Assembly (NCBI RefSeq): GCF_001194135.2
Contig: NC_068984.1
Span: 81,857,979-81,921,978, forward strand
Direction of reading: 5' to 3'
From: Octopus bimaculoides
Taxonomy: Eukaryota
DNA: 64,000 nucleotides
This document shows, piece after piece, positions 6,124-63,588 of the stretch. The translations under genes and the position numbers were made by a program. Below the pieces are notes generated by a model. It worked only from the letters and a program-made list of their open reading frames with translations. It did no database searches and was not told the origin of the DNA. The stretch's first letter is position 1. The number at the start of each line of letters is the position of its first letter.

Positions 6124-38631
<32,508 letters not shown>

Positions 38632-39370
38632 ATGAGTAAATAAAAAAAGCAGTAGTCCCTGATCAAAAATGGTTCCTAAACCTCTGCAGCACATCTCATC
38701 ATAAGAGCAGTCTTTCTCTACTCAATGAGAATTTTTTTTTTGTTTTGATTTTTGAGTTTTTGTCTCTATTTTTTTTTTTTTTTTCAGAAAGTGTGTTTAA
38801 AACTAAAAAAAAAAAATTTTAAAAGCAAACACATAAAAACAGCAATGATGAAAATATTTAAATACTCCTTCCACAAATCCCTTTTTTTTTTCTTCTTTTA
38901 TTTATCTATTTATTCTTTAAATGGACTGGCAGTAATTTAAATGAGATTTGCTTTTGGCAAAGTTGTGAAACCTGAAGTTTTGCACTTTCCTTAAGTTTTT
39001 TTTGTTTTTATACTTATTATTTAATGATGATTATTTAATCTATTAAATTTACATTTATTGAGGATTAATCTATAATTGGACAAAGTCAGAAAATATAAAC
39101 ATATATTTATTAGTTGGCTTAAGCAGTTTGTTTGTGAGCCTTTGCCTTGCTCTACTGTTGCCTTACATTCCAATGATTTTCGGTAAAACTCTACTTTCGG
39201 CTTGCTTTCTTTGTTTTTTTTTCTTTTTCCATCCTCTAGTAATAATACATTCCGTTAAAGTGTAGTTATACATTAGCTTCATATATTTTCCAGCATGGAA
39301 AAAACAGACATAAAATGAATGAATGAACAAATATATATATAAAGCTAGAATGTAACTACACATATATATG

Positions 39371-44077: not shown

Positions 44078-45880
44078 NNNNNNNNNNNNNNNNNNNNNNN
44101 NNNNNNNNNNNNNNNNNNNNNNNNNNNNNNNNNNNNNNNNNNNNNNNNNNNNNNNNNNNNNNNNNNNNNNNNNNNNNGATTGCTGGGAAACAATCAGGAC
44201 CAGCAGTTGAGTTTGCGTCCACCTCATCTATAGCTAACAGTATATCTTCTTCGCTAATATCGATGTATTCCATCGTAACTGCCACTTTTGAACTGGTAAT
44301 TCAGTACCTCACTGATTCTGGTTGGACTATCTATGAGGGAGCCATCCTTTTGGAAGAAGGTGTCCTATCTTGCAGCGTGCTGATGCTGTTTCTTTGGCGT
44401 AATGAAAGAAGGCCTTTGGGTTTGACTTAACGTTTTTTATAACCCAGGCTTCTTTGTCTGCTCTTTCCCTCATATAGGACTGTTGCAGGCTTTTTTCAAT
44501 TTCCATCAGTGTTGTTTTTAGGCAGGACCTTTCGTTACTTTTGGGATGTTGGTTGAGGCGATTTGCAACCTTCGCCCGTCGTCTCATGAGGATCATCCTC
44601 TCCCTTGGAATTTTCTTCCTATTTGTTGTGACCTTGTGCTCTGGAGCATATTTCTGGCATATGGCTTGCACAACAGATATGAAATATTCTAGTTTCATGC
44701 CAATGTCTGGTGTGGAGAGTCATTTCGGACAGTCCTGTCTGCGGATCTCTTTTTGGATCTGCTTTGTGGAAGTACAGATTGGAGAGATTTCGGGTGCTTC
44801 CTTTAGGCTGTATGTCTCTAGCTACCTTTGGCCCAAACATAGACAGGTCTATTATGTTGTGATCCGAGACTAATGTCGGCTTCACTTTCACATCATGAAT
44901 GATGTCTATATTGTTCGTGAAGCAGAGATCCAAAATGTTATTCGCCCTAGTTGGTCTGAGTACAACTTGCTCTATGAATAGGGCATTGGTGAGGTTAAGC
45001 AAGGACTCCACCTGTGCTTGTTTGCAATGAGTCATTCCTGAGAGCAGGAGTCCTTCGGGCCATTTGACGTTGAGGAAGTAGCTATCACCCATAAGAAATA
45101 TGCCCACGTGGTGTTCCAGTTTCATAAGGATTTCTTTAATTCTTGTGAAGCAATCTTCAAACTTGCCTATGTGGTTTGGAGCATCCGGTGGGCAATACGT
45201 ATTGCATATGACTATAGTGTATTGTCTTATGTATACAATTGGAGTGTCACATACCGAATTTGAGTATGACAGTAAGACCTGGAGTGTGAGGTCGTCACGG
45301 ATGTATACAGCAACTCCACCATGGCTCCTTTCCTTTCTGTCTGTTCGCAGTAGGGCATATTTTGGTACGTGTATTTCTTCATCCTCTACATCAGGGCTGA
45401 GGTGAGTGTCCACGAGTGCTATTGATAGGGCTTGATTGCATGCAGCAAGGTCTCGTAGGAAAAAATTTTTGCTTTTGTTATGATGCAACAGGACCCCAAT
45501 ATTTAGTAAAAATATTGGCGTGACGTCTGTGCAGCCGTTAGGGGAGGCCATCCTGTGTCTGTTGACTGTGGTGGTTTTGCGCAGTGGCGGACAAGATTCC
45601 TTGTTTGCGCTTGGTGTAGCCAGATCAGCTGCTGCACAATCTTTTGTGCCATGCACAAAAGAGACTCTTGCTCAGCTGCTGCCTTGTGCATAACCTCCGA
45701 AGAGCGCACTTCTTTTCTATAGTTTTTCCTTGGGAACGATTTTTGTCTTTTCTCATGGAAGCTTTTCTCCTTCAGGCCCCTGTAGTTTTGGCGGGGTCTC
45801 GGGTGAGCAAACCGGCAGTTTTTGCCGTCTTCCCCATGCCAACAGTGACAATTAGTTGGTTGTCAATATAAAACTCAGAG
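43850..45880 (-). mobile_element. CR1-group LINE: ORF1 tail, APE endonuclease, start of RT (decayed)
   Basis: GKNCRFAHP (ORF1 end); DTHL, DRKERSHGGVAVYIRDDL, FLMGD, RPTRANNILDLCFTN, VSDHNII (APE); KSNPKAFFHYAK, STAGPDCFP. Confidence 0.88.
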
Positions 45881-46379
45881 TTTCGGATACCGGGGCTGAA
45901 AATTGGTCCGGCATCTCATCATAAGTTATTAATAACTGATGAGATGCCGGCGCATTTTTCNNNNNNNNNNNNNNNNNNNNNNNNNNNNNNNNNNNNNNNN
46001 NNNNNNNNNNNNNNNNNNNNNNNNNNNNNNNNNNNNNNNNNNNNNNNNNNNNNNNNNNNNNNNNNNNNNNNNNNNNNNNNNNNNNNNNNNNNNNNNNNNN
46101 NNNNNNNNNNNNNNNNNNNNNNNNNNNNNNNNNNNNNNNNNNNNNNNNNNNNNNNNNNNNNNNNNNNNNNNNNNNNNNNNNNNNNNNNNNNNNNNNNNNN
46201 NNNNNNNNNNNNNNNNNNNNNNNNNNNNNNNNNNNNNNNNNNNNGTAGCTATATATGGAAAAAAAGACAAAGTAGAAAATGCTAAAATACTTTTATAAAG
46301 AACATTACAGAACCAGTTTCGATCCTTGAGATCTTTTCAACAGTAAATATGAATAATAGATTTTTGAAAAATTATTGAA

Positions 46380-47036: not shown

Positions 47037-47535
47037 NNNNNNNNNNNNNNNNNNNNNNNNNNNNNNNNNNNNNNNNNNNNNNNNTGAATGTGTGTGTGTG
47101 TGTAATGTGCTTAACATCTAAAAAATGCTAGATCTAGCAATAAAAATGCTAATTTTGTAGCAATATACGGAAGTGTCAGCTCACCCACTTCAGAATATAT
47201 GTACAATGTCACCTATACATAATTAACTAATTAATTATTTAGTTTTGATAACTTATTCTACTGCGTTAGAAAGAACACGCATATTATCAGGTTTCAAAGT
47301 ATGTATCTATCGCTAATTGAATGACATCTACGCTAAAAACAGTTATTCCTTCAGTCAGATGCAATTTTCAAGACATTTTTGATATGATGGGAACTAAGTC
47401 AATGATAAAATATATGACTTTATTTCTGGTACCGCAGATACAATTTTCAAGACTCTTTTAATAAGATGGAAACTATTTCAATAATAAAAAATATAACTTC
47501 TAGTACTAATTCAATGACTAAAAATATCGACTTAC

Positions 47536-47583
47536 CATCTTTTACCTCAGTCTCAACAACTTTGTACGAGTATATCGGAACAT
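47536..47583 (-). CDS. Microexon, 48 nt (x-VPIYSYKVVETEVKD)
   Basis: tattatcttgcag|ATGTTCCG...AAAGATG|gtaagt. Confidence 0.65.
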
Positions 47584-50500
47584 CTGCAAGATAATATATT
47601 ATAATTTTCTTATAATGTTTAATATTTCTTACGTAAATGTGGAAGCTGGGATTTGTCACGGTATGACAATGAAGGAAATTTAACAGTCATGATTTATCTC
47701 AACGTTATGACAATCGCATATTTATGAAAATTTTATTACTGTAAATTGTTACATGGTTGCCGTAAAAACGAAAGTGTTTATCTGGTTTTGATGAAACCAA
47801 TTATGAATATGAGGATTTTCAGTGTCACCTTTTAATTAATCTTTTATATTATGTATCTGTTCAAATGTGATACACAGATTGCTATTTCAAACTAATACTG
47901 CTTCCGTTACACATAACGAATTTTATATTCACGTTGTCGGTCAACGTCGACATCAGTGGTTTTTACAATCATTAATTTGTCTTATCAGTAACGGCAGAGT
48001 TTGCTTTAGCATGTGATTATCAGTGGATACTTCTACTGACCAGACCCAAAGAGGTACTGATATATCGTCTGGTACTGGTATATCGTCTAGTACTGATATA
48101 TTTTTGTGATTTTTAACACCGTACATCTATAAGAAATACTATCTCAGAATGCATATGCTTATATCCATTTTCATACAAAATTTACTCAACTGCTTCTGCT
48201 GTAATATAGTGTTTTGCGTCAAACATCATGAAATAGATATATTACTGTGGTAATAATTACTGTTATTATTACTACTCACAGTTATTTCCATCAACTCGCC
48301 AGTCAGTCTAAAATGAGGTTTTGGAATGATATTTAAACTGGGCTGATTCCTGATCAGCAAAGTTCACGACTAAAATAACTAATGACGGATATCATACCTT
48401 CGTTCTTAGAAGAGTAAATCTTATTTACGGCCAATCATTTCCAGTCTTCTGTATTCAGCAATTTCGTCAGTTCGATAACCAGAATCACTACATTTGAACT
48501 TTTGTAGGATTTCTATTCCTGATCAGGTTTCACAATTTTCACGCAAGACTTGTGAAAAGAAGTCTACATGAAGGATATCTTTCTAGGATACGATAATGAC
48601 TAATAAATGAATTCGATCTTTAATTATATTACTGTCTTCGCTGTCGGCAGTAGTCGTCCAGCTATGTAACTTGTCTTCTAAAGAAAACAGTTTTGAGTCA
48701 CAATGTTAAAATGATAACTAATGAAGATGAGAATATCTAAATATCAACTTACTACTTGGTTGTTCAAGAACACGTGGTTGTTCAAGAGCACGTTTTGCAT
48801 ATTTCTGATTATCTATAATCGAAAGAAATATGATTTTTTAGAAAAGAAAATGACATATCACTTAGCTAATAATTATTAATTTTATTGTTTCTGTTTAGGA
48901 TAGGAGATGGTTAAATCTATGAAGCTGCGGGGTTATTTAATTACATTAATATATTAAGCATATCAACAGTTATGGATGGTAGAAATGGTAAATCACTGGA
49001 TTTTATGCCGAAATGCTAGAATGAATATCAATTTACACCTTACTACTTTACGTGTACCTTTTGTGTATTTTCGAACATCTACAGTTCGAAACAAATATTG
49101 TAAGACATTAAAAAAAAAAACATAGCTAATTATGTTTCTGTTTAGGATAATAAATGGTTGAATCTGGAAAATCATAGGTTATTTAATTGCATTAACATTA
49201 GGCATCCTTTCAAGGGCAATGGGTGGTAAAATTGGTAAAACGCTGTAATTATTCAACTTTCGCTCCTCAACAGTTTCATTTCATAATCATCTAGCCGGAT
49301 TCGAAGTACGTATTCGTTAGCTGGTGTGTGACCTTTTTACAAGAGGCATTTCTGTCTCAAAATAGGCGCAAATTACAAGTTGTTGTTTAATGTGATAGAA
49401 AATGTTTTAATGATTGGTAAATACATATTGACTTACTCTTTGTTGCTGTAGTCGTGAAAGTTTTATTCAATACGGTTTTAGGAGCTGGAACATATAACAT
49501 TATTGTTTTGTGATAATGATAAGTATTTCAATGATTTAGTATTTACTACATAAATATAGAATCTGATAGGTTTCTTGCTATAAATTATCGCTAATTTGTA
49601 CTATAAAAGATAAAATAAAACAATGGGTTATATCTTGCCTTGCAAAATCAAATAACGAATATTAGGATGATGATTTGGAAGAAATGGCATAAAGGTCTGA
49701 TAGTGTTTAGTGCTGCCTGAAATTAATCATATTTTACTTTCATTACCCTTTCTATAAACAATGTACAAAAGTAAGAGGAAATGTTCACTGTGGGATAAGC
49801 CCGTTGTAGTTCGGGTTTCCGCCGCTAGAAACCATTTGATGCAACCCATGGGCATCAGTCTGCCGACCGACGTCGTCAAGTAAAGTCGTACTGACACGTG
49901 GTGCATCTTTGTTTTGCAGTGCTTCTCACAGGGGTGGGTGGGGGAACAGATCGAATAAACTATATTGTTGAAACCAACAGAACTTGCAGAATCGCTAGCA
50001 CGTTAGTGGTAGTTCCTCATTCTAATGTTCTGAGTTCAAATTCCACAGAGGTCGACTTTGTTTTTCATCCTTTCGAGGTCGATAAAATACGTAACAGTTG
50101 CGTACTTGAGTCCATATAATCGACTAGACCCTCTCCCCACAAATTTTCAAGATTTGTACCCATAGTAGAAAGAATTAGTAAATCTAAGTTCAAGGCGGCA
50201 AGCTGGTGGAGTCATTACTGCATCGGACAAAATGCTTAGTGGTAATTCTTCTTGCTTTACGTTCTAAGTTCAAATCTCGCCGAGGTCGACTTTGTCTTTT
50301 ACCTTTTCGGGGTCGATAAATAAGTACTACTTTTACACACACAAGGGTTGATGTAATTGACTCGTCCTTTTTGCCAAATTTCAGGTTTTGTGTCTATAGC
50401 AGAGAGAATTATTCAATCTAGGTGCATTGAAAACATCAACTAATAAAGAGATTGCAACACCATAATGTTACAAACACTATCTACATGAAGCAAACAGTTT

Positions 50501-53500
50501 CGAACTACATACTTGAAAACAAATAATTACAGTCTTCACACTACACATATTATTTTTTTTTTTAATACAACAACATCGTCAATTGCAACAACTTTGTGAT
50601 GTAAAACACTAATTAACGTTTCGAAGCAAAGCTAAACTTGATTGGTTTGGTAAGATTCAGAACACTCAAAAATATCATATAGTATACGTTCAACTGAAGC
50701 TTTGCCCTACAAATCACAGAATCATTTGTAACTATATTATATTGTAAATTATATTTTCTTGACCATAGAAAAAAGTAAACATTGCACCAGTAGCAGATTA
50801 CACAGCTCCACATTGCAACTGTTTTTTGACACCAATCTACTCAAGCACTCACACCCTCACAACAGGCGTAAGAAGGATGTTGAGTAAAAGAAAAGAAGAA
50901 GAATTGTAGAAAGACCTATTTAAGCAAACTCATCATTATACACAAAGATCTTGTAAATCAAAAGATCATACTTCCTCCCAAATGTAAAAAGTAATATAAA
51001 CTTACTGTTTTTATCGGAATTTATCTCTGATTCTGAAAACACGAAAAAAGAAAAAGCAAAAATATATTTTTAAAATATTTATTATTTAGAAGAATTCATA
51101 CAGATATCCATGGCAGTCTAACGCAAGCTATCTTTACGAACAGTATTTAGTTCCAGACTTATATGCGTGTTTTTTAAGCTTCTGGTTTTAACTACATTCA
51201 CTCTGCCTTATGTAATGTAGATGTGTCTGTGTCTTAAGATATGTGACGAAGACTGTTTAATATTGGTTTCATAAGAGGCCAGGTATATATATGATGAAAA
51301 TATTCCACTGAATACTGTGTCAAGCTATTATCTCGGATCACACAATTTATTGTAAAACTAGAAACGATTAAATATGTAAAATAGTGTTACACGAACAGGG
51401 TGTTGAGCTGGTAGACTCGCTAGCACGCCGGGCGAAATCCTTAGCAGCATTTTTGTTCGTCTTAACGTTCTGAGTTCAAATTCCACCGAGGTCGACTTTG
51501 TCTTTTAACCCTTCGGGGATCGATAAAAAAGAAAGTATCAGATGAACACTGGAGTTGATGTAACCGATTTCCTCCTCCCCCAAAATTTCTGGCCTTATAC
51601 CAAAACCAGTAGAGCGTCGCGCAAGTTTCCGAGTAGATATTTTCGTTTGGACATAGCATATTCTAACATACAATTTTGTTTTAGATTACACTGTACGAGC
51701 TAAGATCCATGTCTCTTTACGTTTCTCCAGACGTTTATCTACATAAAAGCCTTTTGCCGATACAGAAGACTATGGACCCGCGAGCACACACACGTGCACA
51801 TTCTTGTATTTTACAAATATCTTACTCTTCTTTTATTCTCTTACTCGTTTCAGTCATTTGACTGCGGCCATGCTGTTGCACCGTCTTAAAAGGTTTTGTC
51901 AAGTAAATCAACCACCGTAATTATTTTAAGCCTTATTCTGTCAGTTCTTGTGTCGAACCGCTAATTTCGGCAACGTAAACAAATCAACACCAATTGTCAG
52001 GCAGTGGGGGAACAAGTATATGCAGAAAGATGCAACCCCACCCCATCACCACCACCACCACCCACACACGCACATGCATACACACACACGCACACACACA
52101 TACACATACATACATACATAAGTTTACGGTGGTTTATTCCCCCAATTCACTACTTCAAAAAGTTTCGATGTTTCTTTAAAAATCAGGAAAGAACACAACA
52201 ATCAATACATACAAAACAAATATCTTACCATTTGAAAAGTATAACTGCTTGATCAATCTATGATATTCTGAAAATTGTAAAAAGTAATTAGTACTTTTTA
52301 GAAAATACTTCATTTAATTTAGACATTACTGCAAAAAAGACACCTAAAAACATTACTATATTCAATTGTATAAAAAGACATTCAGATCTTCAACTCTCGA
52401 TAGAGAGCTAGAATATCAAATGTTTGAAAGTACATATCACATAGAGATGTAAGAGTTTTGCAAGATCACAATGCTGAGTTCAGAACACCAAAATAGGTCT
52501 TACAGATAGAAATGAAAGGATGTTTAATAATCAGACGTGTTACAGACTCCACAACAAATTGAAGACTGCAAATAGTATATCGTCGATGCATCAATCACAT
52601 CATTCTGAAAGAGCTTGCACCCACTCCTCTGATATTTCGAATATTAAAAAAAAATAATAATAAAAAAACAGAACAAGTATTCTCAAACGCAAGAAGCAAG
52701 TGTAGCGTCAATTTTTACATCAGTCCCTGATTACAACAATGAATTATGCCATCTGAGCAAAACTTGAAAGTTAAGTCACTTGGGCATGAACTCAGCAGTG
52801 AGTCGGTTGTAATTACAGGCGTCCAACTTTTCGGCTACAAAAGTACCTAGGGACACATGCTGCATGATAAATGAAAGTGAATCAAGAAATTTTGATTAAT
52901 AAAAATTACTTCTGTTGTGAGGAAGAAACAATCTGTCATGTTATGGATGGATTCTGGTAAAAAAAAAAAAAAAAAAAAAGAAGACATGGGATATAATCCT
53001 AGAATTAAAATTTAAAATAAAAATGATTAGAAATAGAATATAGTTGGTTTTGTCATTGTGATCTTTAAACTCTATAGCGATAACTCAAAGTTTGGTTTGG
53101 CCTCGTAAACATCATTGGAGTAATAAAGTCTCGCCAAGATACAAGAGATTTTATAAACACCAAGGTTAATAAACACTAAGTCGCATAATAATGAGTTTGT
53201 TCTCCCCTTAGAACAGGTGCAATTTTAATTATTAAATTTTGATTCTCGATATCAAATATATTAGCGCACATTTTACAATTTGTTTTACGTGCAGCGTGCA
53301 TATCTTTTATTTCCAGAATCATTCTTTTTAAGTTATCACAACACTCAGTCTTCATTCTTTAAATACAGTATAAAGTAGAAGCTGCATAACATGATTATCG
53401 ATAATGTTAACAACTGGTTATTGTTATCAGAATTAGTAGCTCTTAATCTCATTGTTTGCTTAGTGTTACCAGCTGTTATTGTTATGCAAAGACTTCATCT

Positions 53501-56500
53501 CAAAGTAATAAAAATACACAGCTTCTACGATATTCTATACTAGCAGATATAGTCGACGTTGCTCGGGATTAAAATAGCATAGTTTTTCATTGTTTTACTT
53601 GTTTCAGTCATGTGACTGCAGCCATGCTGGAGCACTGTATTTAGTCGAACAAATCAACACACGAACTCACATAATGAATCTTGCAAACCCAATCCCAATA
53701 GGTATTGCGAATAGCTGCCTGACTGAATAAAAAACCGTGAATAATTCCTAATTATGTAATATAAATATATATCGCAGAAGTAAATAAAAATAAAATATTG
53801 TTGTACATACTATGATTCTCTGCCAACCATCTCTTCAGTTTGCCAATTCCTTAGATTGTAAATTTAGAAATAAATTNNNNNNNNNNNNNNNNNNNNNNNN
53901 NNNNNNNNNNNNNNNNNNNNNNNNNNNNNNNNNNNNNNNNNNNNNNNNNNNNNNNNNNNNNNNNNNNNNNNNNNNNNNNNNNNNNNNNNNNNNNNNNNNN
54001 NNNNNNNNNNNNNNNNNNNNNNNNNNNNNNNNNNNNNNNNNNNNNNNNNNNNNNNNNNNNNNNNNNNNNNNNNGTTATTATCTAGTGTAACAATTTAAAA
54101 TGATAATAACAGAATCAATAATATAGGCGATAGATAGATTATTAGAATATTAATTCAATATTTTAACTCTCTTATTGGTAACGAAATATATAATTTGGAA
54201 TAAAAATACCAAAATTCCCCAGTTTTATTTTTTAATATGCAATTACTCTGAAACAGATATCTGTCAGTATTTTTACAGTATTCTCCAGTAATTTCAACAT
54301 GTAAATCATAACATCTACAAGTATACTTTGGAGAACTGAAAATGCAGATGTGCTTCATGAAGTCACAGATTGGATTATAACCCTATCTACATATTGTATA
54401 TGTGTGTGTACAGACAACGTTGTACAGGTAGCATGTTATACACATGTTATAAATCTTTCCTGTTTTCGTTGTAACAAATCCAGACAAACAGATATCCACA
54501 ATCTCATAATAACAACTGGCACTCCGTCGGTTACGATAAGTGTTCCAGTTGATCCGATCAACGGAACAGCCTGCTCAAGAAATTAATGTGCAAGGGGCTG
54601 AGCACTGTACAGACACGTGTGTTCCTAACGTAGTTTTCAAAGAGATTCAGCATGACACAGAATGTGACAAGGCTGGTCCTTTGAAATACAGGTATAACTC
54701 ATTTTTACCAGCTGAGTAAACTGAAGCAATGTGAAGTAATGTGCGTTGCTCCAGGATACAACGCATCGCCCGGAATCGAACTCACGACTTTACGATCGTG
54801 AGTCGAATACTCACGTGCCTTCACACAATCTCAGAACAGACATAGACTGGATGTAAGCAAAAAGAAAATAAAACCTATTCTTGAAGAAATAGCCATCCAT
54901 CCATCCATCCATCCATCTTCTCTGTCCACTGTCTCTAGGAGGGTCGTGGGGGTAGAGTTTTCGGGCCCCTCATCCATAGGGTCCTATCAGAAACAACTGA
55001 CTTTAAAACTTCTGGCTGGATTCCCAACCAAGACCAACTGGGACTATCTTGCTATTAGTCTACCCATGGATCTCCGGCTGGTTGGCTCAGCTCGAAGAAC
55101 CCGTCTTGCGATTCTTTCCTACACCATTTTAATCACATGTCCATAGTACTGGAACTGTGAACTATCAGTGCGAAAAAGTAGCAGTTTGACCTGGGGAGAC
55201 TCCTTGATTTCCGAGCTACGCGCCCTGTCGAGTAATGTTGCTCTAGAGATCATTCGGGGAAACCCCATATCCGTCGCTTGTATTCTTGATTGTACTCTTT
55301 CGGTCATTACCCAACATTCATGACCAAAGATGAGAATAGGCACAAAAACCAAACCACATCAATTTTACCATTCTGGAAGGCCGTGTACACCTCATGTCAT
55401 TGCCTTATTTCTTTGTCTATTTTATAAAAGACGATTGCAATTAGTAAACCAATGAATTGCTCGTAAATTCTTCTCTACATCTTCTTATTACAACTGAGTA
55501 TTATACCATCCTTTGTGAAAGCACATCCAGGTATGTTTGTTTCATATTCTAGGGAAAATATTACCTTACTTGAAAATAAGTGAGGGTTTGTGGCAGGAAA
55601 ATCATCCAGCCATAGAAAAATTTGCTTTAATGAGGTTCTCGTCTGACCCACGGAAGCATGGAAAAATAAACAACATCGATGATGATGATAAAAAAAACAA
55701 CTGTGATTATATATAACCACAAGAATTATAATCTCATTTGATCATGCATATACTTACTATTAGAGTGCATCAACAGATCTAGAACTAGCTGTACCCAGGC
55801 TGTTTCAATAAAACTATTTTTTAAGATACATGTCGTCAAAGCAGAAATTTAGAAAATTTTCCTAAATAAAACTAGGTTAGAGTTAATTAAATGTATGTTA
55901 ACTAAATATATGTTGAGATTAGATATACAGTTGCCTCAAAATGTCTCGTGTCTACAGTAAAACACTAAACTAGAAGCAGGTTAGACACCAGCGACACCTT
56001 TCCTGTGTTAATAGTAATCAGCCTACTGAGACATCCATTCACACTCTTAAAATAGAAACACACACACGTGCGTTCCCCATACATACACCCCCACCCACCC
56101 ACACACACACACACACAATCATCTTCTTTAGAATAGTTTTTACAAGTCAGTAAAACATACTTGTAGTAAGCGACTTAATATAAAGATAAACAGAAAAGGA
56201 TCTACCAGCTTACTGTTTTCATCGATTTCATGATTTCCCGATGCGTTTTGCTCTGAAAACAAGAAGCCCAATAGATATTTTTTAAAAATATATTGTGTTT
56301 ATTAGAATTCATATGTCCATAATTAAAATTTGTTAATTTTTAGAAATAGGATTAAGTTTCAAATGAAGTAATGTTTCTAAAAGCTACAGATATTGTTTCA
56401 TCCACTCCATCAAGGTATTTAGCCCAAGGACAGTTCCATCCAGTAGGCTTGTAATCGAAAAAATACACGTATTAACCATCTGTCTTTTTTGTGTATAGGA

Positions 56501-59500
56501 CTGCTCTGTCCAGTGTGTCCCACTTGATATAAGGGTTAGGGTATGATTTGAGATCATTTGGGTGTTATTTCTAGCGTGTTAACCAACCGCGTAAAACTCC
56601 CTCGTTGAATCGCATTCAATGTCTAGTTTAATGTAAATGTATCTGTGTTCCAAAACTAGGACGAAGTTACGTGCTTAACACCGAGTTCAATAAATCGAGT
56701 ATTTTTTAGATAAAATATTCTACAGAAAATAGTCTCAGCTCATAATAAATATTTCCAGGAATTTTCTGCTCATTTCAGGGCACACACTTTATAGTCAAAT
56801 TAGTCGCTAGTATCTAAACCGTTTAATACATAACATGGTCTAGCGCAGTGGTTCTCAAACTTTTCAAAAAACTTACTTGCTGGTCCCCTTACACCTTTTT
56901 CGATGATTTGCTGTTCCCTATGAAATGCAGGATAATTAACATGGAAAAATGACATACATTCGTGTACTGTAATTTCCCGACTATGAACCCGAATGAGAAT
57001 GGGTGTCTGGCAAAAGGCAAGGACATGCAGAAACATGCACCGGTGAGGATAACGACAGCGATAGACATGCAAACGTGTGGATTGCAATAGTGGAGTGGTG
57101 AATCATGTGAGCGTAGAATACCGACAGCACATGTACGATCAACCGTTATACCCGCATATTTTCCATCAGTCAATCACACCTGTTGTACAGCAAGTGTGAT
57201 TAGTAAATGAGCGTATAGGAGAGGCGGGTGATTTTGAGGTTAACAATAAGAAAGGATGATAGCATGCGAAAAACTGAATGTCTTGAAATTTTTAAACTTA
57301 ACTGTCTCAAACCACCTGTTTTCACGATACTTCAGCCCCTCTTCACGGTCCCCCTAAAATCGTTTCGCGGTCCCCCTAAAATCGTTTCGCGGTCCCCCAG
57401 GAGACTGCAGACCCCATTTTGAGAACCACTCGTCTAGTGCATAGTTCATCCTGGATATTTTCGTTGACCAGAAGACTTAACTTTATCATGTGTATGATTA
57501 GACGTAACTATATCAATAAAATATACTATAAATGTAATTTTATGTGTGTGTGTGTGTGTGTGTGTAACGGTGATGTTTTTAGTTGAAGTCGAGGGTCACC
57601 AATTGTAACAGTTGTTGTTAAGGTGTTGGTTGCCAGTATGCAAGATGGAAGAACAGTGATCGAAGTTTTAAGGAAATATTTATTTACTTTTCTTGTATGT
57701 TGTTGCTGTTTATGTTTAGTCAACTGCTAGCTACCCAACTAGGAATTAGAAGATAGTGTGAATGTTAAAAGTAAGGAGTCGATAAAAGGATACCTTCATG
57801 GTGCCTGACATTTAAACGGCAGTGGTGTTGTGATAAGACACTGTATCATAGTTGGCATTCTCACTAGTAAGCCTTCTCTCAGTTGAATTATCTCACTAAC
57901 TGGATTTTGCCTTTGGTCGCCTCTCCGTCATCTCCTTTTTGCCAATTAGGTTCTCACTAACTGGATTCTGCCTATGGTCGCCTCCCCGTCATCTACTTTT
58001 TGCCAACTAACTTTTTCCTACGGTGTGGTAGTATTTATAATTTTCCAAACTAGTTAAAAGGAAAGACATATTGTTGAGAACAATAGATTTCGTTGTCGGT
58101 CTGTTATCTCTATTCTAGCTTTTGGTGACCAAGAAGAGGTTAGAAGTGTGAAGTGGCAAAGACATTATTCTGTTTAGACAAGGCATCTGGCAAATATAAC
58201 TGCTGGCACTCACAGAAAAACTGTTTTACCGTGAGAAAAGTGCTGTTGAACTGTGAAATGAAATTTAGCGAATCCACGTTATGCCTGCATCAACCACTAT
58301 ATATATATGATCAACGATATGAATACACTTACATTGTTTTAGATTATTGTAGGTACATGAATATTACTTCACTGAAATTAGTCCAGAAATTTAGGAGTTA
58401 AAGACAGAAATGACCATTATGAAATTGTGATGAAGTAACTTACCTTTACAAGCTGAAACCCAGTTAACCTCTTAAACTGATGTCACAGAGATAGGTCTCT
58501 GTAACATCAGAAAGTTTAATTAGAATACGCTGTAAGTTCAACTAGAGAAAGAAGTTTGCGATTCTGAGACCGTAAATGCATTTAACATTTGTCATTGAAT
58601 ACGTAAATATGTATTATATAAAGGTAAAAGAAAATGTTTTGCTCCGATTATACCGTATGATCACTGTATATTTAACGATTAGCTTCTGACCGCAGCTAAA
58701 GATCATCTTATAGTAATCTGTTAATAAAACTGGCAGTATATTTCCATTTCTCGTTGATTGTTCATTTGCATAGCGAGAAGACAGCATACATTTGTACCAT
58801 CAGAGCTGTCTCTATACAATTTACTGAACTTCGTTGTTCAAAATTGTTCCTGATCGGTAGACAACGCTAGAAATGACAGGTTACACACCTCCAATATCTT
58901 TTCTGTTTTTGTTGTTATCCTTCCCCTGATACATACACTATCTCAAAAGAGACAAAAATAGAGTGAAGTCAAAGACAATTGCAGCAACTAAAGCAGAAAA
59001 TAGCAAGAAATGTATCTTCAGACGCATGGTTTTTGTAAATAAAGAATAACATGCTTCTCTCAAGCTTCATTATATAAAGAGAAATATAAGAAAATTAAGC
59101 TTACTATTATTACAGAAGTCAATCTTTTGCGCTGCCGGATATTCTGAAAACAGGAAATAGTTTCAATATATATTTTTTCAAATTGAATATTTATTTCAGA
59201 AAGATTTATACCATACGAATGTTATCTAACTTTATTTGCAACTATAGTTAAAATTAAGTTCTGAAGTTGTTAATATATCTATTATATGTCTTATCTCATT
59301 TACTGTGCCTTCTATAAGGTAAATGTTTCTGCAGGCCTCGATGTAATGACGGGGACCAATTTTCAATATGGTTTCATAATTTCAAGCATGTATTATCTAA
59401 CACATTGAGTAGGATACTGTACCACATTAATATAAATAATGAAGTTGGAATGTTTAGTGCCCATTTCCGATCACCCCACTCAAAATCAATCCGGTAACTA

Positions 59501-61740
59501 GTAATCAACTCTTTAACTGCATAACTGGTCGACATCACGATCGAGGGATCGCAATATCAATCAGCGTACAAGTATTTACGTTCCACTCCTTGACTATTAC
59601 GTCTGGACGCTTTGCCTTAAACTTTTTATCAGTTCGAACAAGCATGTCTCAAATTATTTTGAATAGGCTGATGTCATATATTGTATTTCACATGTTTATG
59701 CCACTTTTTATCCATTTTCATGTCGAAGAGTTGGTATAGTACTCAAGCATGTCTTAAATCCGGAAATGACGTTGTTAACCATCTCATTGTACTTGTTGCA
59801 TAGTCTGCGTGTGATGCTATCATCATTCCCAATTTCATTTCAGTAGTTATTTTTGGCAACATTATTCTTGATTTTGTGCAGACGCTTCTGTTTCTACATT
59901 AATCCAGAGCTTTCGAACCATTGTTGGCTTCCGATCAAGCTTGTTTCTTCTCCATCGGATCCTGTGGGATATTGGCCATAGAGCGATTTTCTTCTTTCCA
60001 TTTTACTTTAGCAGATTCTAAAATCTCATTTTCATTTTGTCTTTTCTTTTTTATTCATTTTACTGTTGTTATTTTGTAGTAGCTGTCTATGTTTTTATCA
60101 GTCACTGCCCTCTTTGTGTATGAGGTAGATGTATTCTATCTATAAAATAACATAACATGTTACAGCACAAATGTTTGAGAGAACTTCGTAGTTAGGCTGG
60201 ACTGTCGATGTCGTAGACACATTTGACGTACTGTTTATGGTTTGTAGAGGCAGGTGTTTGGTCTGTGGTCTTCATACAGCAATGATGTAGACAGGCGTCT
60301 GGTGATGATGAGAGCGGAAAGTGACTGGTGTAAGGACATCGTTGCTAGAGACGAGATGCGTGTGTGGTTAGTGGCAAGTGCCAAAGACCTAAAGCAGTCG
60401 AAAATTGTCCTTCTCATAGGGAATATTGGGCTCCCAGAAGCTAGTGAAAATTTTTCTGCTAAGAGAACTCGTAATCCATTTTAGCGCATCTGACTAGTTG
60501 ACCGTGTAAATAGGCGCAATTGTTTAGGGGACAATTTGCGCCTAAAAACTAACCAATCAGGACAATGGTTACAACCTGGTCTTTATAGCTAAGTGTTTTC
60601 TGCTATGTCCAAACAATAACTATAAATCAAAGGGCGAGAGAATAATTTGCTTTCTTTAATTTTGTCAATCCGTTCTGCTACAAGGGTAATCAAAAATACA
60701 GAACTGGTATTTTAGATAAGTAAAGTACCAGTTCTATACTAAGGTCAATTATCTGTTTTTTCTGCCTTTCTCAATCTGTTCCTCTCTCTACCAAGAAGAA
60801 ATGGGTTATGGTCAAACTTGAAAAGGAACGGGTTCCCCAGGTATAAAAATGCTGAAGACACGCCTTATATTACGGTTGCACCTCTATTATTCTATCAGGC
60901 ATAGAGGGGCCTAAAACAAACGCGATTGCAGGAATTTCTCCTTCAAGTCTCACTAATAGCAGAACCTCAAATCGCTACTTCAAGTTAGCCAAACACTAGT
61001 CTATGGTACAGAACTATCACTGTTTAAAACAATGAGCTGTGCCATATATGATACCTGGTTACAGGTATATGAAGCAAATCAAGTGAGAGTTAAGTGCCCT
61101 TGATTGTAGCTTTGCACTGCATTGCTAACAGATATATGATTCGCAGAAACTTTCATCAGTCTTACACGCAATCGAAACTACCAGTGGCGGGTGTTTTAGA
61201 ATAAATATAGGTTGGAAAATAACAAAATATAATCAACGTACCTCGNNNNNNNNNNNNNNNNNNNNNNNNNNNNNNNNNNNNNNNNNNNNNNNNNNNNNNN
61301 NNNNNNNNNNNNNNNNNNNNNNNNNNNNNNNNNNNNNNNNNNNNNNNNNNNNNNNNNNNNNNNNNNNNNNNNNNNNNNNNNNNNNNNNNNNNNNNNNNNN
61401 NNNNNNNNNNNNNNNNNNNNNNNNNNNNNNNNNNNNNNNNNNNNNNNNNNNNNNNNNNNNNNNNNNNNNNNNNNNNNNNNNNNNNNNNNNNNNNNNNNNN
61501 NNNNNNNNNNNNNNNNNNNNNNNNNNNNNNNNNNNNNNNNNNNNNNNNNNNNNNNNNNNNNNNNNNNNNNNNNNNNNNNNNNNNNNNNNNNNNNNNNNNN
61601 NNNNNNNNNNNNNNNNNNNNNNNNNNNNNNNNNNNNNNNNNNNNNNNNNNNNNNNNNNNNNNNNNNNNNNNNNNNNNNNNNNNNNNNNNNNNNNNNNNNN
61701 NNNNNNNNNNNNNNNNNNNNNNNNNNNNNNNNNGAAGAAG

Positions 61741-61802
<62 letters not shown>

Positions 61803-63588
61803 GAAGAAGAAGAAGTAGAAGAAGAAGAAGGAGGAGGAGGAGGAGGAGGAGAAGAAGAAGAAGAAGAAGAAGAAGAAGAAGAAGAAGAAGAAGAAGAAGA
61901 AGAAGAAGAAGAAGAAGAAGAAGAAGAAGAAGAAGAAGACATTCAGTGATGAGGGAAAGGATTAGAAGAGTGTTATCGCAGGGTAAGAGCAATACTCAAA
62001 ACAGAGCTGAATGCAAGAAACAGGATCGAAGCGATCAATACTTAAGTCATACAAGTTGTGACTTACAGTTTCAATATCATAAACTGATCGATTACTTGAC
62101 AGAAAAATACGAAGATTGTTGACAATGCATAGAATGCACCACCCTAAGGCAAATATAGAGCGACTTTATCTGCCAAGAAAAGAGAAAGGCCGTGGACCTT
62201 TACAACTGGAATTAACAATGAAGATTACCACAACTGGCCAAGACACCTACGTGAAAAACTGTGAGGACTGGATGCTAAAACTTGTCTCAAAACATGAAAA
62301 CAAGAAAGCATCATACTCAGTAACAAAACAGGCAAAAGAATATATAAGTGAATTCCAAATACAACAAAAATTCCAGAATTAGACGACTAGAAACAAGCAC
62401 AGAAAAAGCTAAGCGTATGAAAACCCGTGCTAAAACTGCTGCCTTAGATATTCTCACTGATAAACGGCAAGAAAAACCTCTCAATGGCAAATACCCAAAG
62501 AGAGCTAATAATGCCAATGTTGACAAAGCCCTTACCCATCAATGGCTAATGGCTTCTGGTTTTAAATCAAAAACAGAAGGGTTTATCATAGCAGCCCAAG
62601 ATCAAAGCCTACCTACAAGAAACTACCAGGCCAACATATTAAAAGAACGGCAGCTGTCCAACATGTCGTGTATATCAATAACAAAATGAAATCATTGATC
62701 ATGTTGCCTCCATGTGCAGTCTTCTTGCGCCTACAGAGTATCTCAACAGGCATGATAGAGCTGCACAATATATTCACTGGGTAATTTGCAAAAACCTGGA
62801 CCTGCCCCATGATAAAAACTCGTGGGAACACCTCCAGTGCTTGAAAATGATCACATCTCACTCCTTTGGAACTTCACCATTCAAACTGACAGAAAGATAG
62901 GCCAGATATTATATTGAAATACTTAAGACAAAAATCATGCTTCCTCGTTGATATGACTGTCCCAATCGATATTAACGTATCTGTCAAGACCTACCAAAAA
63001 CTGATCAAGTATAAAGATCTTGAAATAGAAATTGGCAAAATGTGAAACCTCAAGACTAAAATAATACTTATTGTCATAGGTGCCCTAGGATTGCTACCTA
63101 TCTCAGATACCAGGAAACCCCAAAATGGCAGAAATTTAAAAGATAGTGCTCATGGGAACTGCCCATATTCTACGTAAAATACTGTCTATGTAATCTCAAA
63201 ATTTAAAACAAACTCATAATTTTCTTATGTTTTCTTAAACATTCTCTAGAACAATACGATGTACAAAACCAAATATATGATATCCTAGGCATAACACCAA
63301 CATGAACTTCTAACTTGTTGTTTCTTGAGGCCTCTGGGTGAGATTTGGAACCAACTTGCACAAATGCAAATCAAAAGTCAAGCATATGATAATAATAATC
63401 ATCAATAATATTAATACGCCAATTTGTTTTTTGTACGTACCTGACGCGTGTGTCACGCTTAAGAGAAAGAAACTTTTGTTGCTTAAATAAAACTTTTTAA
63501 CTAGAACGCTTGCAATTTCTGGAAGAGATTTGAGACCACTACCTATGTGTTGTATTATTACTTTTCAACACCGATGCCCACTGGGCCA
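47536..63588 (-). CDS. Candidate micro-exon gene: array of symmetric phase-1 microexons (first/last exons not resolved)
   Basis: Ten exon candidates of 21-60 nt, each with yAG acceptor and GTAAG/GTAAT donor, each a multiple of 3, all open in phase 1. Phase 0 and phase 2 are each closed by stops in some members. Duplicated intron flanks link several. No homology recognised. Confidence 0.65.
48633..48677 (-). CDS. Microexon, 45 nt (x-DKLHSWTTTADSED)
   Basis: ctgttttctttag|AAGACAAG...GAAGACA|gtaata. Confidence 0.6.
48753..48812 (-). CDS. Microexon, 60 nt (x-NQKYAKRALEQPRVLEQPS)
   Basis: tatttctttcgattatag|ATAATCAG...CCAAGTA|gtaagt; internal in-frame 18-nt duplication. Confidence 0.65.
49437..49484 (-). 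CDS. Microexon, 48 nt (x-PKTVLNKTFTTTATK)
   Basis: gttatatgttccag|CTCCTAAA...ACAAAGA|gtaagt; Thr-rich, NKT sequon. Confidence 0.65.
49960..51610 (+). mobile_element. Three SINE family A copies (~49960-50160, ~50183-50405, ~51405-51610)
   Basis: Same core as 27822-28033. Confidence 0.8.
51006..51032 (-). CDS. Microexon, 27 nt (x-SEINSDKN)
   Basis: ttttcgtgttttcag|AATCAGAGATAAATTCCGATAAAAACA|gtaagt. Confidence 0.65.
52229..52267 (-). CDS. Microexon, 39 nt (x-YHRLIKQLYFSN)
   Basis: ttttacaattttcag|AATATCAT...TCAAATG|gtaaga. Confidence 0.65.
54893..55352 (-). mobile_element. RTE-clade (Rex3/Expander-like) LINE 3' end with (ATGG)n tail
   Basis: FVPILIFGHECWVMTERVQSRIQATDM.F.R...LLDRARSSEI...GHV.KM; (CCAT)6 at 54893-54916 on +. 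Confidence 0.85.
55758..55778 (-). CDS. Microexon, 21 nt (x-LLMHSN)
   Basis: agttctag|ATCTGTTGATGCACTCTAATA|gtaagt; weak pyrimidine tract, abutting a repeat. Confidence 0.45.
56214..56252 (-). CDS. Microexon, 39 nt (x-QNASGNHEIDEN)
   Basis: cttcttgttttcag|AGCAAAAC...GAAAACA|gtaagc. Confidence 0.65.
56846..57431. mobile_element. hAT/Charlie-type MITE, 586 bp
   Basis: TIRs CAGTGGTTCTCAAA / TTTGAGAACCACTC; 8-bp TSD GTCTAGCG / GTCTAGTG; internal 22-bp tandem repeat at 57346-57398. Confidence 0.85.
57891..58010. repeat. 61-bp tandem duplication
   Basis: TCTCACTAACTGGATT.TGCCT.TGGTCGCCTC.CCGTCATCT.CTTTTTGCCAA x2. Confidence 0.9.
59105..59143 (-). CDS. Microexon, 39 nt (x-YPAAQKIDFCNN)
   Basis: atttcctgttttcag|AATATCCG...AATAATA|gtaagc. 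Confidence 0.65.
59330..60040 (-). mobile_element. Highly decayed R4/Dong-clade LINE 3' portion
   Basis: TDKKFKAKRPDVIVK...TCTLIDIAIP (RLE PD-D motif) with upstream zinc-finger-region remnants. Confidence 0.7.
61734..61939. repeat. (GAA)n/(GAG)n trinucleotide repeat next to an N-gap
   Basis: Direct reading. Confidence 0.98.
61940..63416 (+). mobile_element. 5'-truncated R4/Dong-clade LINE (RT C-terminus, zinc-finger region, RLE) with TAA-rich tail
   Basis: MHHPKANIERLYLPRKEKGRG, ETEGF-like KTEGFIIAAQDQSLPTRNY, EYLNRHDRAAQYIHW, LLWNFTIQTDRK, VDMTVP.D.N...K..KYKDL, VIGALG, GTAHILRK; stop at 63191-63193; ATAATAAT tail at 63388-63416. Confidence 0.9.
63562..63588 (-). CDS. Microexon candidate, 27 nt (x-AQWASVLK)
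   Basis: gttgctgtttcag|TGGCCCAGTGGGCATCGGTGTTGAAAA|gtaata. Confidence 0.45.

What the first reader, a model, noticed from the sequence alone, without database searches (positions are those of the whole stretch)
47536..63588. Hidden minus-strand micro-exon gene: ten symmetric phase-1 microexons that can be combined in frame
Seen in sequence: ten segments of 27, 39, 39, 21, 39, 27, 48, 60, 45 and 48 nt (63588-63562, 59143-59105, 56252-56214, 55778-55758, 52267-52229, 51032-51006, 49484-49437, 48812-48753, 48677-48633, 47583-47536). Each has a yAG acceptor; eight have GTAAG donors and two GTAAT. Every length is a multiple of 3, and phase 1 is the only frame open in all of them. The nine from 59143 down join as ..YPAAQKIDFCNN-KQNASGNHEIDEN-NLLMHSN-KYHRLIKQLYFSN-ESEINSDKN-TPKTVLNKTFTTTATK-NNQKYAKRALEQPRVLEQPS-KDKLHSWTTTADSED-NVPIYSYKVVETEVKD.., a polar S/T/N/D/K-rich chain with NAS and NKT sequons. 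Established: Schistosoma micro-exon genes consist of short symmetric exons whose skipping yields variant secreted proteins. Inference: this is an analogous cephalopod locus, where any subset of exons stays in frame (up to 2^10 combinations), giving a variable extracellular protein. I know of no such description in cephalopods but cannot check the literature. Standard ORF-based annotation would miss it.
Basis: partly seen in the sequence, partly recalled or inferred. Interest (0 to 1): 0.88.

Follow-up and report, generated by a model that had tools for sequence, protein, structure and literature searches.

The report
Annotated octopus orphan gene of symmetric micro-exons
The stretch holds a real but already annotated, uncharacterised Octopus bimaculoides gene whose coding core is eight tiny in-frame exons; it resembles the micro-exon genes of parasitic flatworms in layout, but nothing yet shows that it makes variable or secreted proteins.

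Summary
All ten segments exist as described. Seven coincide exactly with coding exons of NCBI RefSeq protein XP_052823599.1 (uncharacterized LOC128247653, Octopus bimaculoides), so the gene is not hidden. It omits three reader exons (63588, 55778, 48677), which are no better than background candidates.

The core is eight consecutive phase-1 micro-exons of 39, 39, 39, 39, 27, 48, 60 and 48 nt, with GT-AG introns of 0.6-2.9 kb. Seven strict-signal exons cluster in 11.7 kb; 200 shuffles never gave more than four. The joined 339 nt has no stop in one frame (P about 5e-5 from composition).

The protein is an orphan: an HMMER scan of 1.84 billion representatives finds only itself. Both annotated ends are weak. 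The start codon and first 39 residues lie in a degenerate retrotransposon fragment, and there is no signal peptide. The C-terminus is read-through of a GTAAGT donor.

Both assembly gaps lie in an intron or upstream and break no exon. The flatworm-like layout is met. Secretion, splice variation and homology are unmet or untestable here. Modest interest.

The parts
59418..59535 (-). Annotated first coding exon of LOC128247653 (ATG 59535-59533; 39 codons + 1 nt; donor GTATCC at 59417). It is derived from a degenerate retrotransposon ORF tail and has no signal peptide.
   Evidence: Exact CDS reconstruction. hhalign of a retroelement profile against this region gave probability 98.4%, E 1e-14, with the alignment running into MSTSYAVKELITSYR.
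59105..59143 (-). Micro-exon 1, 39 nt, phase 1-1 (K)YPAAQKIDFCNN; acceptor tgttttcag, donor GTAAGC.
   Evidence: reader exon, in the RefSeq model.
56214..56252 (-). Micro-exon 2, 39 nt, phase 1-1 (K)QNASGNHEIDEN.
   Evidence: reader exon, in the RefSeq model.
53811..53849 (-). Micro-exon 3, 39 nt, phase 1-1 (R)IGKLKRWLAENH; AAG acceptor, GTATGT donor. It lies 27 nt from gap 53877-54073.
52229..52267 (-). Micro-exon 4, 39 nt, phase 1-1 (K)YHRLIKQLYFSN.
51006..51032 (-). Micro-exon 5, 27 nt, phase 1-1 (E)SEINSDKN.
49437..49484 (-). Micro-exon 6, 48 nt, phase 1-1 (T)PKTVLNKTFTTTATK.
48753..48812 (-). Micro-exon 7, 60 nt, phase 1-1 (N)NQKYAKRALEQPRVLEQPS. It contains an in-frame 18-nt tandem duplication (RALEQP/RVLEQP, 48757-48793).
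47536..47583 (-). Micro-exon 8, 48 nt, (N)VPIYSYKVVETEVKD, followed by a consensus G|GTAAGT donor that the RefSeq model does not use.
47447..47535 (-). Read-through tail of the annotated last exon: GKSIFLVIELVLEVIFFIIEIVSILLKES, stop TGA at 47449-47447. It lies in a 79-nt tandem duplication, so this C-terminus is doubtful.
   Evidence: (D2).
47419..47424 (-). AATAAA polyadenylation-type hexamer 23 nt after the annotated stop. It is compatible with a composite terminal exon.
48633..48677 (-). It is not in the RefSeq model and has a GTAATA donor. It shares an 11-nt stretch, 10 of 11 matching, with exon 49484. It could be a cassette exon or a chance match; unverified.
55758..55778 (-). It is not in the RefSeq model and has a weak pyrimidine tract (7 of 15). 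Unsupported.
63562..63588 (-). It lies upstream of the annotated start, beyond gap 61246-61733, in repeat- and TE-rich sequence, with a GTAAT donor. Unsupported.
53877..54073 (.). Assembly gap inside intron 3. No exon is broken, and the RefSeq CDS is in frame across it.
61246..61733 (.). Assembly gap upstream of the annotated start, abutting (GAA)68 at 61734-61939. It could hide a true 5' exon.

Best explanation
This is the annotated but uncharacterised Octopus bimaculoides gene LOC128247653 (XP_052823599.1). It is a lineage-restricted (orphan) gene.

Its credible coding part is eight consecutive symmetric phase-1 micro-exons of 27-60 nt, separated by GT-AG introns of 0.6-2.9 kb. Together they encode about 113 residues of a polar, methionine-free, probably disordered peptide.

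The gene is built cassette-style. Every exon is a multiple of three, sits in the same phase and ends in A or G. An exon can therefore be gained, lost, duplicated or skipped without a frameshift or a junction stop.

I infer that this layout records how the gene grew and is maintained: exon-level duplication and 3n indels under a reading-frame constraint, as is usual for disordered proteins made of successive same-phase exons. The layout permits in-frame splice variants but does not show that any exist.

The annotated ends are provisional. The start codon and first exon are exonised retrotransposon sequence without a signal peptide. The stop is reached by reading through a consensus donor.

Shown: exon coordinates, identity with the RefSeq protein, non-random clustering, orphan status, and the TE origin of exon 1. 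Inferred: translation, disorder, the growth mechanism, and transcript support behind the RefSeq model.
For: - The CDS rebuilt from the window equals XP_052823599.1 exactly, and all introns are GT-AG.
- Seven strict-signal 3n phase-1 exons lie in 11.7 kb. The plus strand has 3 in 64 kb, and 200 shuffles never gave a cluster above 4.
- All eight model micro-exons are 3n, which is (1/3)^8, about 1.5e-4, if lengths were free.
- Among strict signal pairs taken without any length or ORF condition, the model exons are all 3n and the others are not enriched.
- The joined 339 nt has 0 stops in phase 1, against 5 and 18 in the other frames. P(frame open | composition) is 5e-5.
- Exon 7 carries an in-frame 18-nt duplication.
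- No junction can create a stop.
- No relatives were found among 1.84 billion representative proteins.
- AlphaFold2 mean pLDDT is 37.8.
Against: - No transcript data could be examined. I do not know what evidence NCBI used for the model.
- No orthologue or paralogue exists in the protein collections, so there is no conservation or dN/dS support for translation.
- Exon-to-exon similarity is weak: best p is 0.017 among 55 pairs, so the duplication origin is only hinted at.
- The annotated start is TE-derived and the annotated C-terminus is intron read-through. Those are features one also sees in spurious ORF calls on non-coding transcripts.
- The open-frame statistic is not independent of the annotation pipeline's preference for ORFs.
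Confidence: 0.6

Rival explanations
1. One reading: a MEG-type system in which combinatorial skipping of the symmetric micro-exons produces a pool of variant secreted or extracellular proteins.
For: - The layout matches the MEG definition: most of the coding region sits in very small symmetric exons with long introns (PMC4350168; PMC10526429).
- All skip junctions are stop-free.
- The gene is an orphan set among TEs, as MEGs are.
Against: - There is no signal peptide in the annotated protein, and no signal-peptide exon was found upstream.
- Only one isoform is annotated, in a cluster of one.
- Seven of the eight exons have near-consensus splice sites, which fits constitutive inclusion at least as well as skipping.
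- No paralogous family was found.
- No transcript data are available.
Confidence: 0.12
2. The annotated model is a fragment. The micro-exon core belongs to a longer gene whose true first exon (start codon, possibly a signal peptide) and true downstream exons lie in assembly gaps or were not captured. On this view the unused GTAAGT donor at 47535 is normally spliced.
For: - The core contains no methionine, so the start must come from elsewhere.
- The annotated exon 1 is retrotransposon-derived and has a weak GTATCC donor.
- Exon 8 is itself 3n, phase 1-1, with a consensus G|GTAAGT donor.
- Several gaps lie upstream (61246-61733, and about 2 kb just beyond the window) and downstream (47037-47084, 45961-46244, 44078-44177).
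- Candidate downstream exons exist at 46689-46666 and 40925-40869.
Against: - No strict candidate lies upstream of 59143, either in the window or in the extra flank of L001.
- An AATAAA sits 23 nt after the annotated stop, which fits a real 3' end.
- The downstream candidates occur at the background rate: 4 outside the cluster, against 2.7 per strand expected from shuffles.
Confidence: 0.2
3. It is a non-coding or non-functional transcript, started in or near a retroelement fragment, whose ORF was called by the pipeline but is not translated.
For: - The gene is an orphan.
- It has a TE-derived start and an intron read-through end.
- The predicted structure has very low confidence.
- It has no Pfam domain.
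Against: - Eight of eight exon lengths are multiples of three.
- A 113-codon open frame has P about 5e-5 from composition.
- There is an in-frame 18-nt duplication.
- No known RNA family or hosted small RNA was found.
Confidence: 0.17
4. It is a chance pattern of splice-like motifs with no gene.
For: The loose criterion is common: 40 hits on the minus strand and 21 on the plus strand.
Against: The strict cluster was never reached in 200 shuffles. The segments match an independently built RefSeq protein exactly.
Confidence: 0.02

Closest known systems
Schistosoma / platyhelminth micro-exon genes (MEGs)
   Same: - Most of the coding region lies in very short symmetric exons that are multiples of three (here 27-60 nt; MEGs 6-81 nt).
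- The exons are separated by much longer introns (here 0.6-2.9 kb; MEGs 0.1-5 kb).
- The product is small (under 200 aa) and lineage-restricted.
- Transposable elements lie in and around the gene.
- Any exon subset stays in frame.
   Different: - There is no sequence homology to any MEG family or to anything else.
- There is no N-terminal signal peptide, which all MEG products have (PMC4350168).
- No isoform evidence exists.
- It is a single gene, not a family.
- The host is a free-living mollusc, not a parasite under host immune pressure.
- The exons are longer on average than the typical 15-nt MEG exon.
Cassette-built disordered or structural protein genes with successive same-phase exons (elastin, titin PEVK, SCPP genes; general rule in PMC3632108)
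   Same: It is a run of consecutive symmetric exons of one phase encoding a low-complexity, probably disordered polypeptide. It carries an in-frame internal duplication. In-frame skipping is possible. The phase-1 split-codon layout is like that of elastin (from my own knowledge, not tested here).
   Different: It has no recognisable repeat motif and no homology to these families. The exons are not demonstrably duplicates of each other. It is much shorter than those genes. Its function is unknown.
TE-initiated young or orphan genes (exonised retrotransposon first exons)
   Same: The annotated start codon and first exon lie in a degenerate sense-oriented non-LTR retroelement ORF tail. No orthologues were detected.
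   Different: The downstream core shows frame-preserving architecture (8 of 8 exons 3n) that is not expected of a purely accidental TE-driven transcript.

Membership tests
Micro-exon gene (MEG) class as defined for Schistosoma (DeMarco et al. 2010, as summarised in PMC4350168 and PMC10526429) | Most of the coding region is made of very small symmetric exons (multiples of 3, up to about 81 nt). | tested here: met
   Eight exons of 39, 39, 39, 39, 27, 48, 60 and 48 nt, all phase 1-1. They make up 339 of 546 CDS nt, and all of the CDS that is not TE-derived or read-through.
Micro-exon gene (MEG) class | Short exons interspersed with much longer introns (about 100-5000 bp). | tested here: met
   Introns of 274, 2852, 2364 (gap length estimated), 1543, 1196, 1521, 624 and 1169 nt, all GT-AG.
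Micro-exon gene (MEG) class | N-terminal signal peptide; the product is secreted or membrane-anchored. | tested here: not met
   The annotated N-terminus MSTSYAVKELITSYRIDFEWGDRKW... is not signal-peptide-like and is retrotransposon-derived. A hydropathy and donor-phase scan upstream found no convincing signal-peptide exon. Caveats: the 5' end may be incomplete, gaps lie upstream, and no dedicated signal-peptide predictor was available.
Micro-exon gene (MEG) class | Alternative splicing of the micro-exons yields a pool of protein variants. | not testable with these tools
   There was no access to RNA-seq or cDNA. The protein collection holds a single isoform in a cluster of one.
Micro-exon gene (MEG) class | Sequence membership in one of the described MEG families, or platyhelminth origin. 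| tested here: not met
   phmmer against 1.84 billion representatives returns only the query. The organism is Octopus bimaculoides.
Disordered proteins assembled from successive symmetric exons (PMC3632108) | [quoted passage not shown] | tested here: met
   Eight in succession, all phase 1-1.
Disordered proteins assembled from successive symmetric exons (PMC3632108) | The encoded region is intrinsically disordered. | tested here: inconclusive
   The composition is polar and rich in N, K, T and E. AlphaFold2 run on the single sequence gave mean pLDDT 37.8. For an orphan run without an alignment, that result is weak evidence.
Disordered proteins assembled from successive symmetric exons (PMC3632108) | Exons related by internal tandem duplication. 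| tested here: inconclusive
   Four exons are of identical length (39 nt). Short boundary similarities exist (D6 and D7). Pairwise exon alignments are not significant after multiple testing. One clear in-frame 18-nt duplication lies inside exon 7.

The most novel reading that the evidence does not exclude
Cephalopods have independently evolved a MEG-like device. On this reading, LOC128247653, once its true 5' signal-peptide exon is found, produces a family of secreted peptides by combinatorial in-frame skipping of symmetric phase-1 micro-exons. That would be the first such system outside flatworms.
Probability: 0.1. Interest if true: 0.7.

Novelty: new member of a known kind. Interest (0 to 1): 0.33.

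Why it matters
One source states that MEG-type gene architecture appears restricted to platyhelminths (PMC4350168), where it is tied to parasite-host interaction. A gene with the same layout in a free-living mollusc would suggest that the layout can arise wherever short disordered peptides are built exon by exon, and is not a parasite speciality.

The locus also illustrates practical points:
- RefSeq had already found the gene.
- Both ends of the RefSeq ORF (a TE-derived start and an intron read-through stop) deserve re-annotation.

As a single orphan gene with no expression, variation or function data, its present importance is modest.

Tried and rejected
- The loose splice-pair scan was rejected as evidence because it has too many background hits. 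A strict scan with shuffles replaced it.
- Relatives: word-indexed protein search (one hit), full HMMER search (self only), a metagenome locus scan (nothing), and Pfam (nothing above cut-off; PIG-P at 17.8 bits against a cut-off of 39.3 was ignored).
- A word-indexed search with the exon-1 region peptide returned nothing, and direct BLASTP between two short TE fragments was negative. The TE origin of exon 1 was settled only by building a 30-sequence retroelement profile and running hhalign.
- Exon duplication origin: repeat finder and pairwise exon alignments gave only weak hints, so it is not claimed.
- snoRNA or miRNA host-gene idea: Rfam finds nothing in the whole window.
- Signal-peptide exon hunt upstream: one hydrophobic ORF at 62539-62458 lies antisense in a TE and was rejected.
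- Downstream continuation exons: 46689-46666 and 40925-40869 are listed but occur at the background rate.
- Structure prediction was uninformative, so no fold search was run.
- Gap resolution: the chromosome-level assembly carries the same gaps.
- Literature: no paper joins micro-exon or microexon with octopus or cephalopod, and none cites LOC128247653.
Full report
**1. The observation**

All ten segments are present on the minus strand at the stated coordinates and lengths. Each has a yAG acceptor; eight have GTAAG donors and two GTAAT. Offset 2 (intron phase 1) is the only frame open in every segment.

The window is AT-rich (about 35% GC) eukaryotic DNA with seven N gaps and many transposon remnants.

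**2. Is it more than chance?**

It is yAG + GTAA[GT], 21-60 nt, a multiple of 3, with phase 1 open. It gives 40 candidates on the minus strand and 21 on the plus strand of the window.

All eight GTAAG ones were listed, but only two of the nine GTAAT ones.

A stricter rule requires at least 9 of 15 pyrimidines upstream and a GTAAG donor.
- The plus strand has 3 hits.
- The minus strand has 11, and 7 of them lie within 11.7 kb.
- 200 dinucleotide-preserving shuffles gave a mean of 2.7 per strand. The largest cluster seen in any 11.7 kb was 4.

When the length and ORF conditions are dropped, signal pairs are denser in the gene span. It holds 14 in 11.6 kb. The rest of the minus strand holds 18 in 52 kb, and the plus strand 14 in 64 kb. 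The seven strongest pairs are all 3n, while the other donors show no 3n excess. The core pattern is therefore not chance.

**3. What it is**

The joined peptide hits one protein, E 6e-48. It is 'uncharacterized protein LOC128247653 [Octopus bimaculoides]', XP_052823599.1, 181 aa.

That gene lies on a 147.8-Mb chromosome record, CM046604.1 of GCA_001194135.2. The fetched locus is 100% identical to the window, including the same N runs. The window is therefore this very locus.

A CDS assembled from window coordinates translates exactly to XP_052823599.1, and every intron is GT-AG. The coding segments are:

| Segment | Note |
|---|---|
| 59535-59418 | first coding exon |
| 59143-59105 | micro-exon 1 |
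| 56252-56214 | micro-exon 2 |
| 53849-53811 | micro-exon 3 |
| 52267-52229 | micro-exon 4 |
| 51032-51006 | micro-exon 5 |
| 49484-49437 | micro-exon 6 |
| 48812-48753 | micro-exon 7 |
| 47583-47447 | micro-exon 8 plus read-through tail |

The model contains one further 39-nt phase-1 exon, 53849-53811. That exon also being 3n and phase 1 independently confirms the pattern.

They are statistically indistinguishable from background candidates. Of the three, 48677-48633 is the most plausible. It has a good pyrimidine tract and shares an 11-nt stretch (10 of 11 matching) with exon 49484. It remains unverified.

**4. Gaps**

Gap 53877-54073 lies inside the intron between exons 56252 and 53849. It ends 27 nt before the acceptor. 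No exon is interrupted, and the RefSeq reading frame runs consistently across it. This also supports the order and orientation of the two flanks.

Gap 61246-61733 lies upstream of the annotated start, next to a (GAA)68 microsatellite. Neither gap is closed in the chromosome-level assembly, and either could hide an exon.

**5. Coding evidence for the core**

The eight micro-exons are 39, 39, 39, 39, 27, 48, 60 and 48 nt.
- All are multiples of three, which is (1/3)^8, about 1.5e-4, if lengths were unconstrained.
- All sit in the same phase.
- Joined (339 nt), they have no stop in phase 1, against 5 and 18 stops in the other frames. Random sequence of the same composition keeps that frame open with P about 5e-5.
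- Exon 7 contains an in-frame 18-nt tandem duplication, RALEQP/RVLEQP.
- All exons end in A or G, so no exon-to-exon junction can create a stop.

The open-frame statistic is partly circular, because annotation pipelines prefer ORFs. The 3n symmetry is not circular in that way.

**6. Weak points of the gene model**

*(a) Orphan status.* A word-indexed search and a full HMMER scan of 1.84 billion representative proteins find only the protein itself. There is no Pfam domain, and a metagenome scan found nothing.

*(b) The 5' end.* The annotated first exon is transposon-derived.
- A retroelement ORF2 C-terminal region sits on the plus strand at about 62.1-63.1 kb. It has 164 relatives at E <= 1e-5, some carrying PF13966.
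- A 30-sequence profile of those relatives aligns to the minus-strand region about 59995-59420. Probability is 98.4% and E is 1e-14. The alignment runs into residues MSTSYAVKELITSYR of the annotated protein.
- The donor of this exon is a weak GTATCC.
- The N-terminus is not signal-peptide-like, and a scan for a signal-peptide exon upstream found nothing convincing.
- The micro-exon core has no methionine, so a start must come from some upstream exon.

*(c) The 3' end.* The annotated C-terminus, GKSIFLVIELV...KES, is produced by reading through a consensus G|GTAAGT donor at 47535. The read-through enters AT-rich sequence that is part of a 79-nt tandem duplication. An AATAAA hexamer lies 23 nt after the stop, so a composite terminal exon is possible.

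*(d) Structure and RNA.* AlphaFold2 on the single sequence is uninformative, with mean pLDDT 37.8. No known RNA family lies in the window.

**7. How it most likely works**

My best reading (confidence about 0.6) is a lineage-restricted gene whose peptide is built cassette-style from same-phase micro-exons. The symmetry is the footprint of growth and maintenance under a frame constraint. [quoted passage not shown]

Here the duplication origin is only hinted at. Four exons are 39 nt long, there are short boundary similarities (D6 and D7), and pairwise exon scores are weak.

The architecture permits in-frame exon skipping. Nothing here shows that it occurs. The near-consensus splice sites of seven of the eight exons fit constitutive inclusion at least as well.

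The rivals are:

| Rival | Confidence |
|---|---|
| The model is a fragment of a longer gene with hidden ends | 0.2 |
| An untranslated TE-initiated transcript | 0.17 |
| Chance | 0.02 |

**8. Comparison with known systems**

Flatworm MEGs are defined by three things (PMC4350168; PMC10526429):
- very small symmetric exons making up most of the CDS;
- long introns;
- a signal peptide in all products, and splice-generated variation.

They 'appear to be restricted to platyhelminths' and are enriched in TEs.

This locus meets the two architectural criteria. It fails the signal-peptide criterion as annotated, has no homology to MEGs, and cannot be tested for variation here. It works like, or could work like, a MEG only in the sense of frame-neutral exons. 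It is not a member of that family.

Elastin-type, PEVK-type and SCPP-type cassette genes are the other close analogues. That comparison rests on my own knowledge and was not tested here.

**9. Novelty and verdict**

The gene is already in RefSeq, so it is not hidden. What is new is the recognition of its MEG-like layout in a cephalopod. No paper in the searched library joins micro-exon or microexon genes with octopus or cephalopods, and none cites the locus.

It is a new instance of a known kind of gene architecture, supported by sequence statistics and an existing annotation. Expression, variation and function are unknown. Interest is modest (0.33). The MEG-like variable secreted-protein reading remains possible at roughly 10%.

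Noticed in passing
window 62116-63135 (+) and 59995-59420 (-): There are two copies of the C-terminal part of a non-LTR retroelement ORF2. Its relatives are widespread in cnidarians, crustaceans and octopus, and some carry PF13966 zf-RVT. The degenerate minus-strand copy supplies the annotated start codon and first exon of LOC128247653.
   Followed up: yes
window 58371-58333 and 58476-58444 (-): Two further segments in intron 2 have strong splice-like signals and 3n length (39 and 33 nt). Each has a phase-1 stop. They could be decayed or poison pseudo-exons, or chance matches.
   Followed up: partly
window 48757-48793 (-): An in-frame 18-nt tandem duplication lies inside micro-exon 7 (RALEQP / RVLEQP), with one nonsynonymous difference.
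   Followed up: partly
window 47356-47420 and 47435-47499: A 79-nt-period tandem duplication (83% identity) covers the sequence that encodes the annotated hydrophobic C-terminal tail. An AATAAA lies between the copies.
   Followed up: partly
window 50003-50192, 50236-50426, 51405-51609; also 27827-28036 and 2222-2386: Copies of a short interspersed repeat (about 170-190 nt, 70-80% identical) lie in the gene's introns and elsewhere in the window. None overlaps an exon.
   Followed up: partly
window 44619-45656 (-), 14388-16647 (+), 18088-18991 (-), 2943-3272 (-): Other transposon remnants are present: a LINE endonuclease domain (Exo_endo_phos_2), Mos1/mariner HTH fragments, LTR-type reverse transcriptase plus RNase H, and a zinc-knuckle gag-like ORF.
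   Followed up: partly
window about 37447-38635 (+); L001 30905-32089: A neighbouring PX-domain gene (437-aa product, probably a sorting nexin) converges tail-to-tail on the micro-exon gene. Its last coding ORF ends near 38635.
   Followed up: no
window 61734-61939: A (GAA)68 microsatellite abuts assembly gap 61246-61733 and is probably the reason for the gap. It produces long artefactual poly-Leu and poly-Ser ORFs.
   Followed up: no
window 46689-46666 and 40925-40869 (-): Two strict-signal 3n phase-1 candidates lie downstream of the unused donor at 47535. They could be continuation exons but occur at the background rate.
   Followed up: partly
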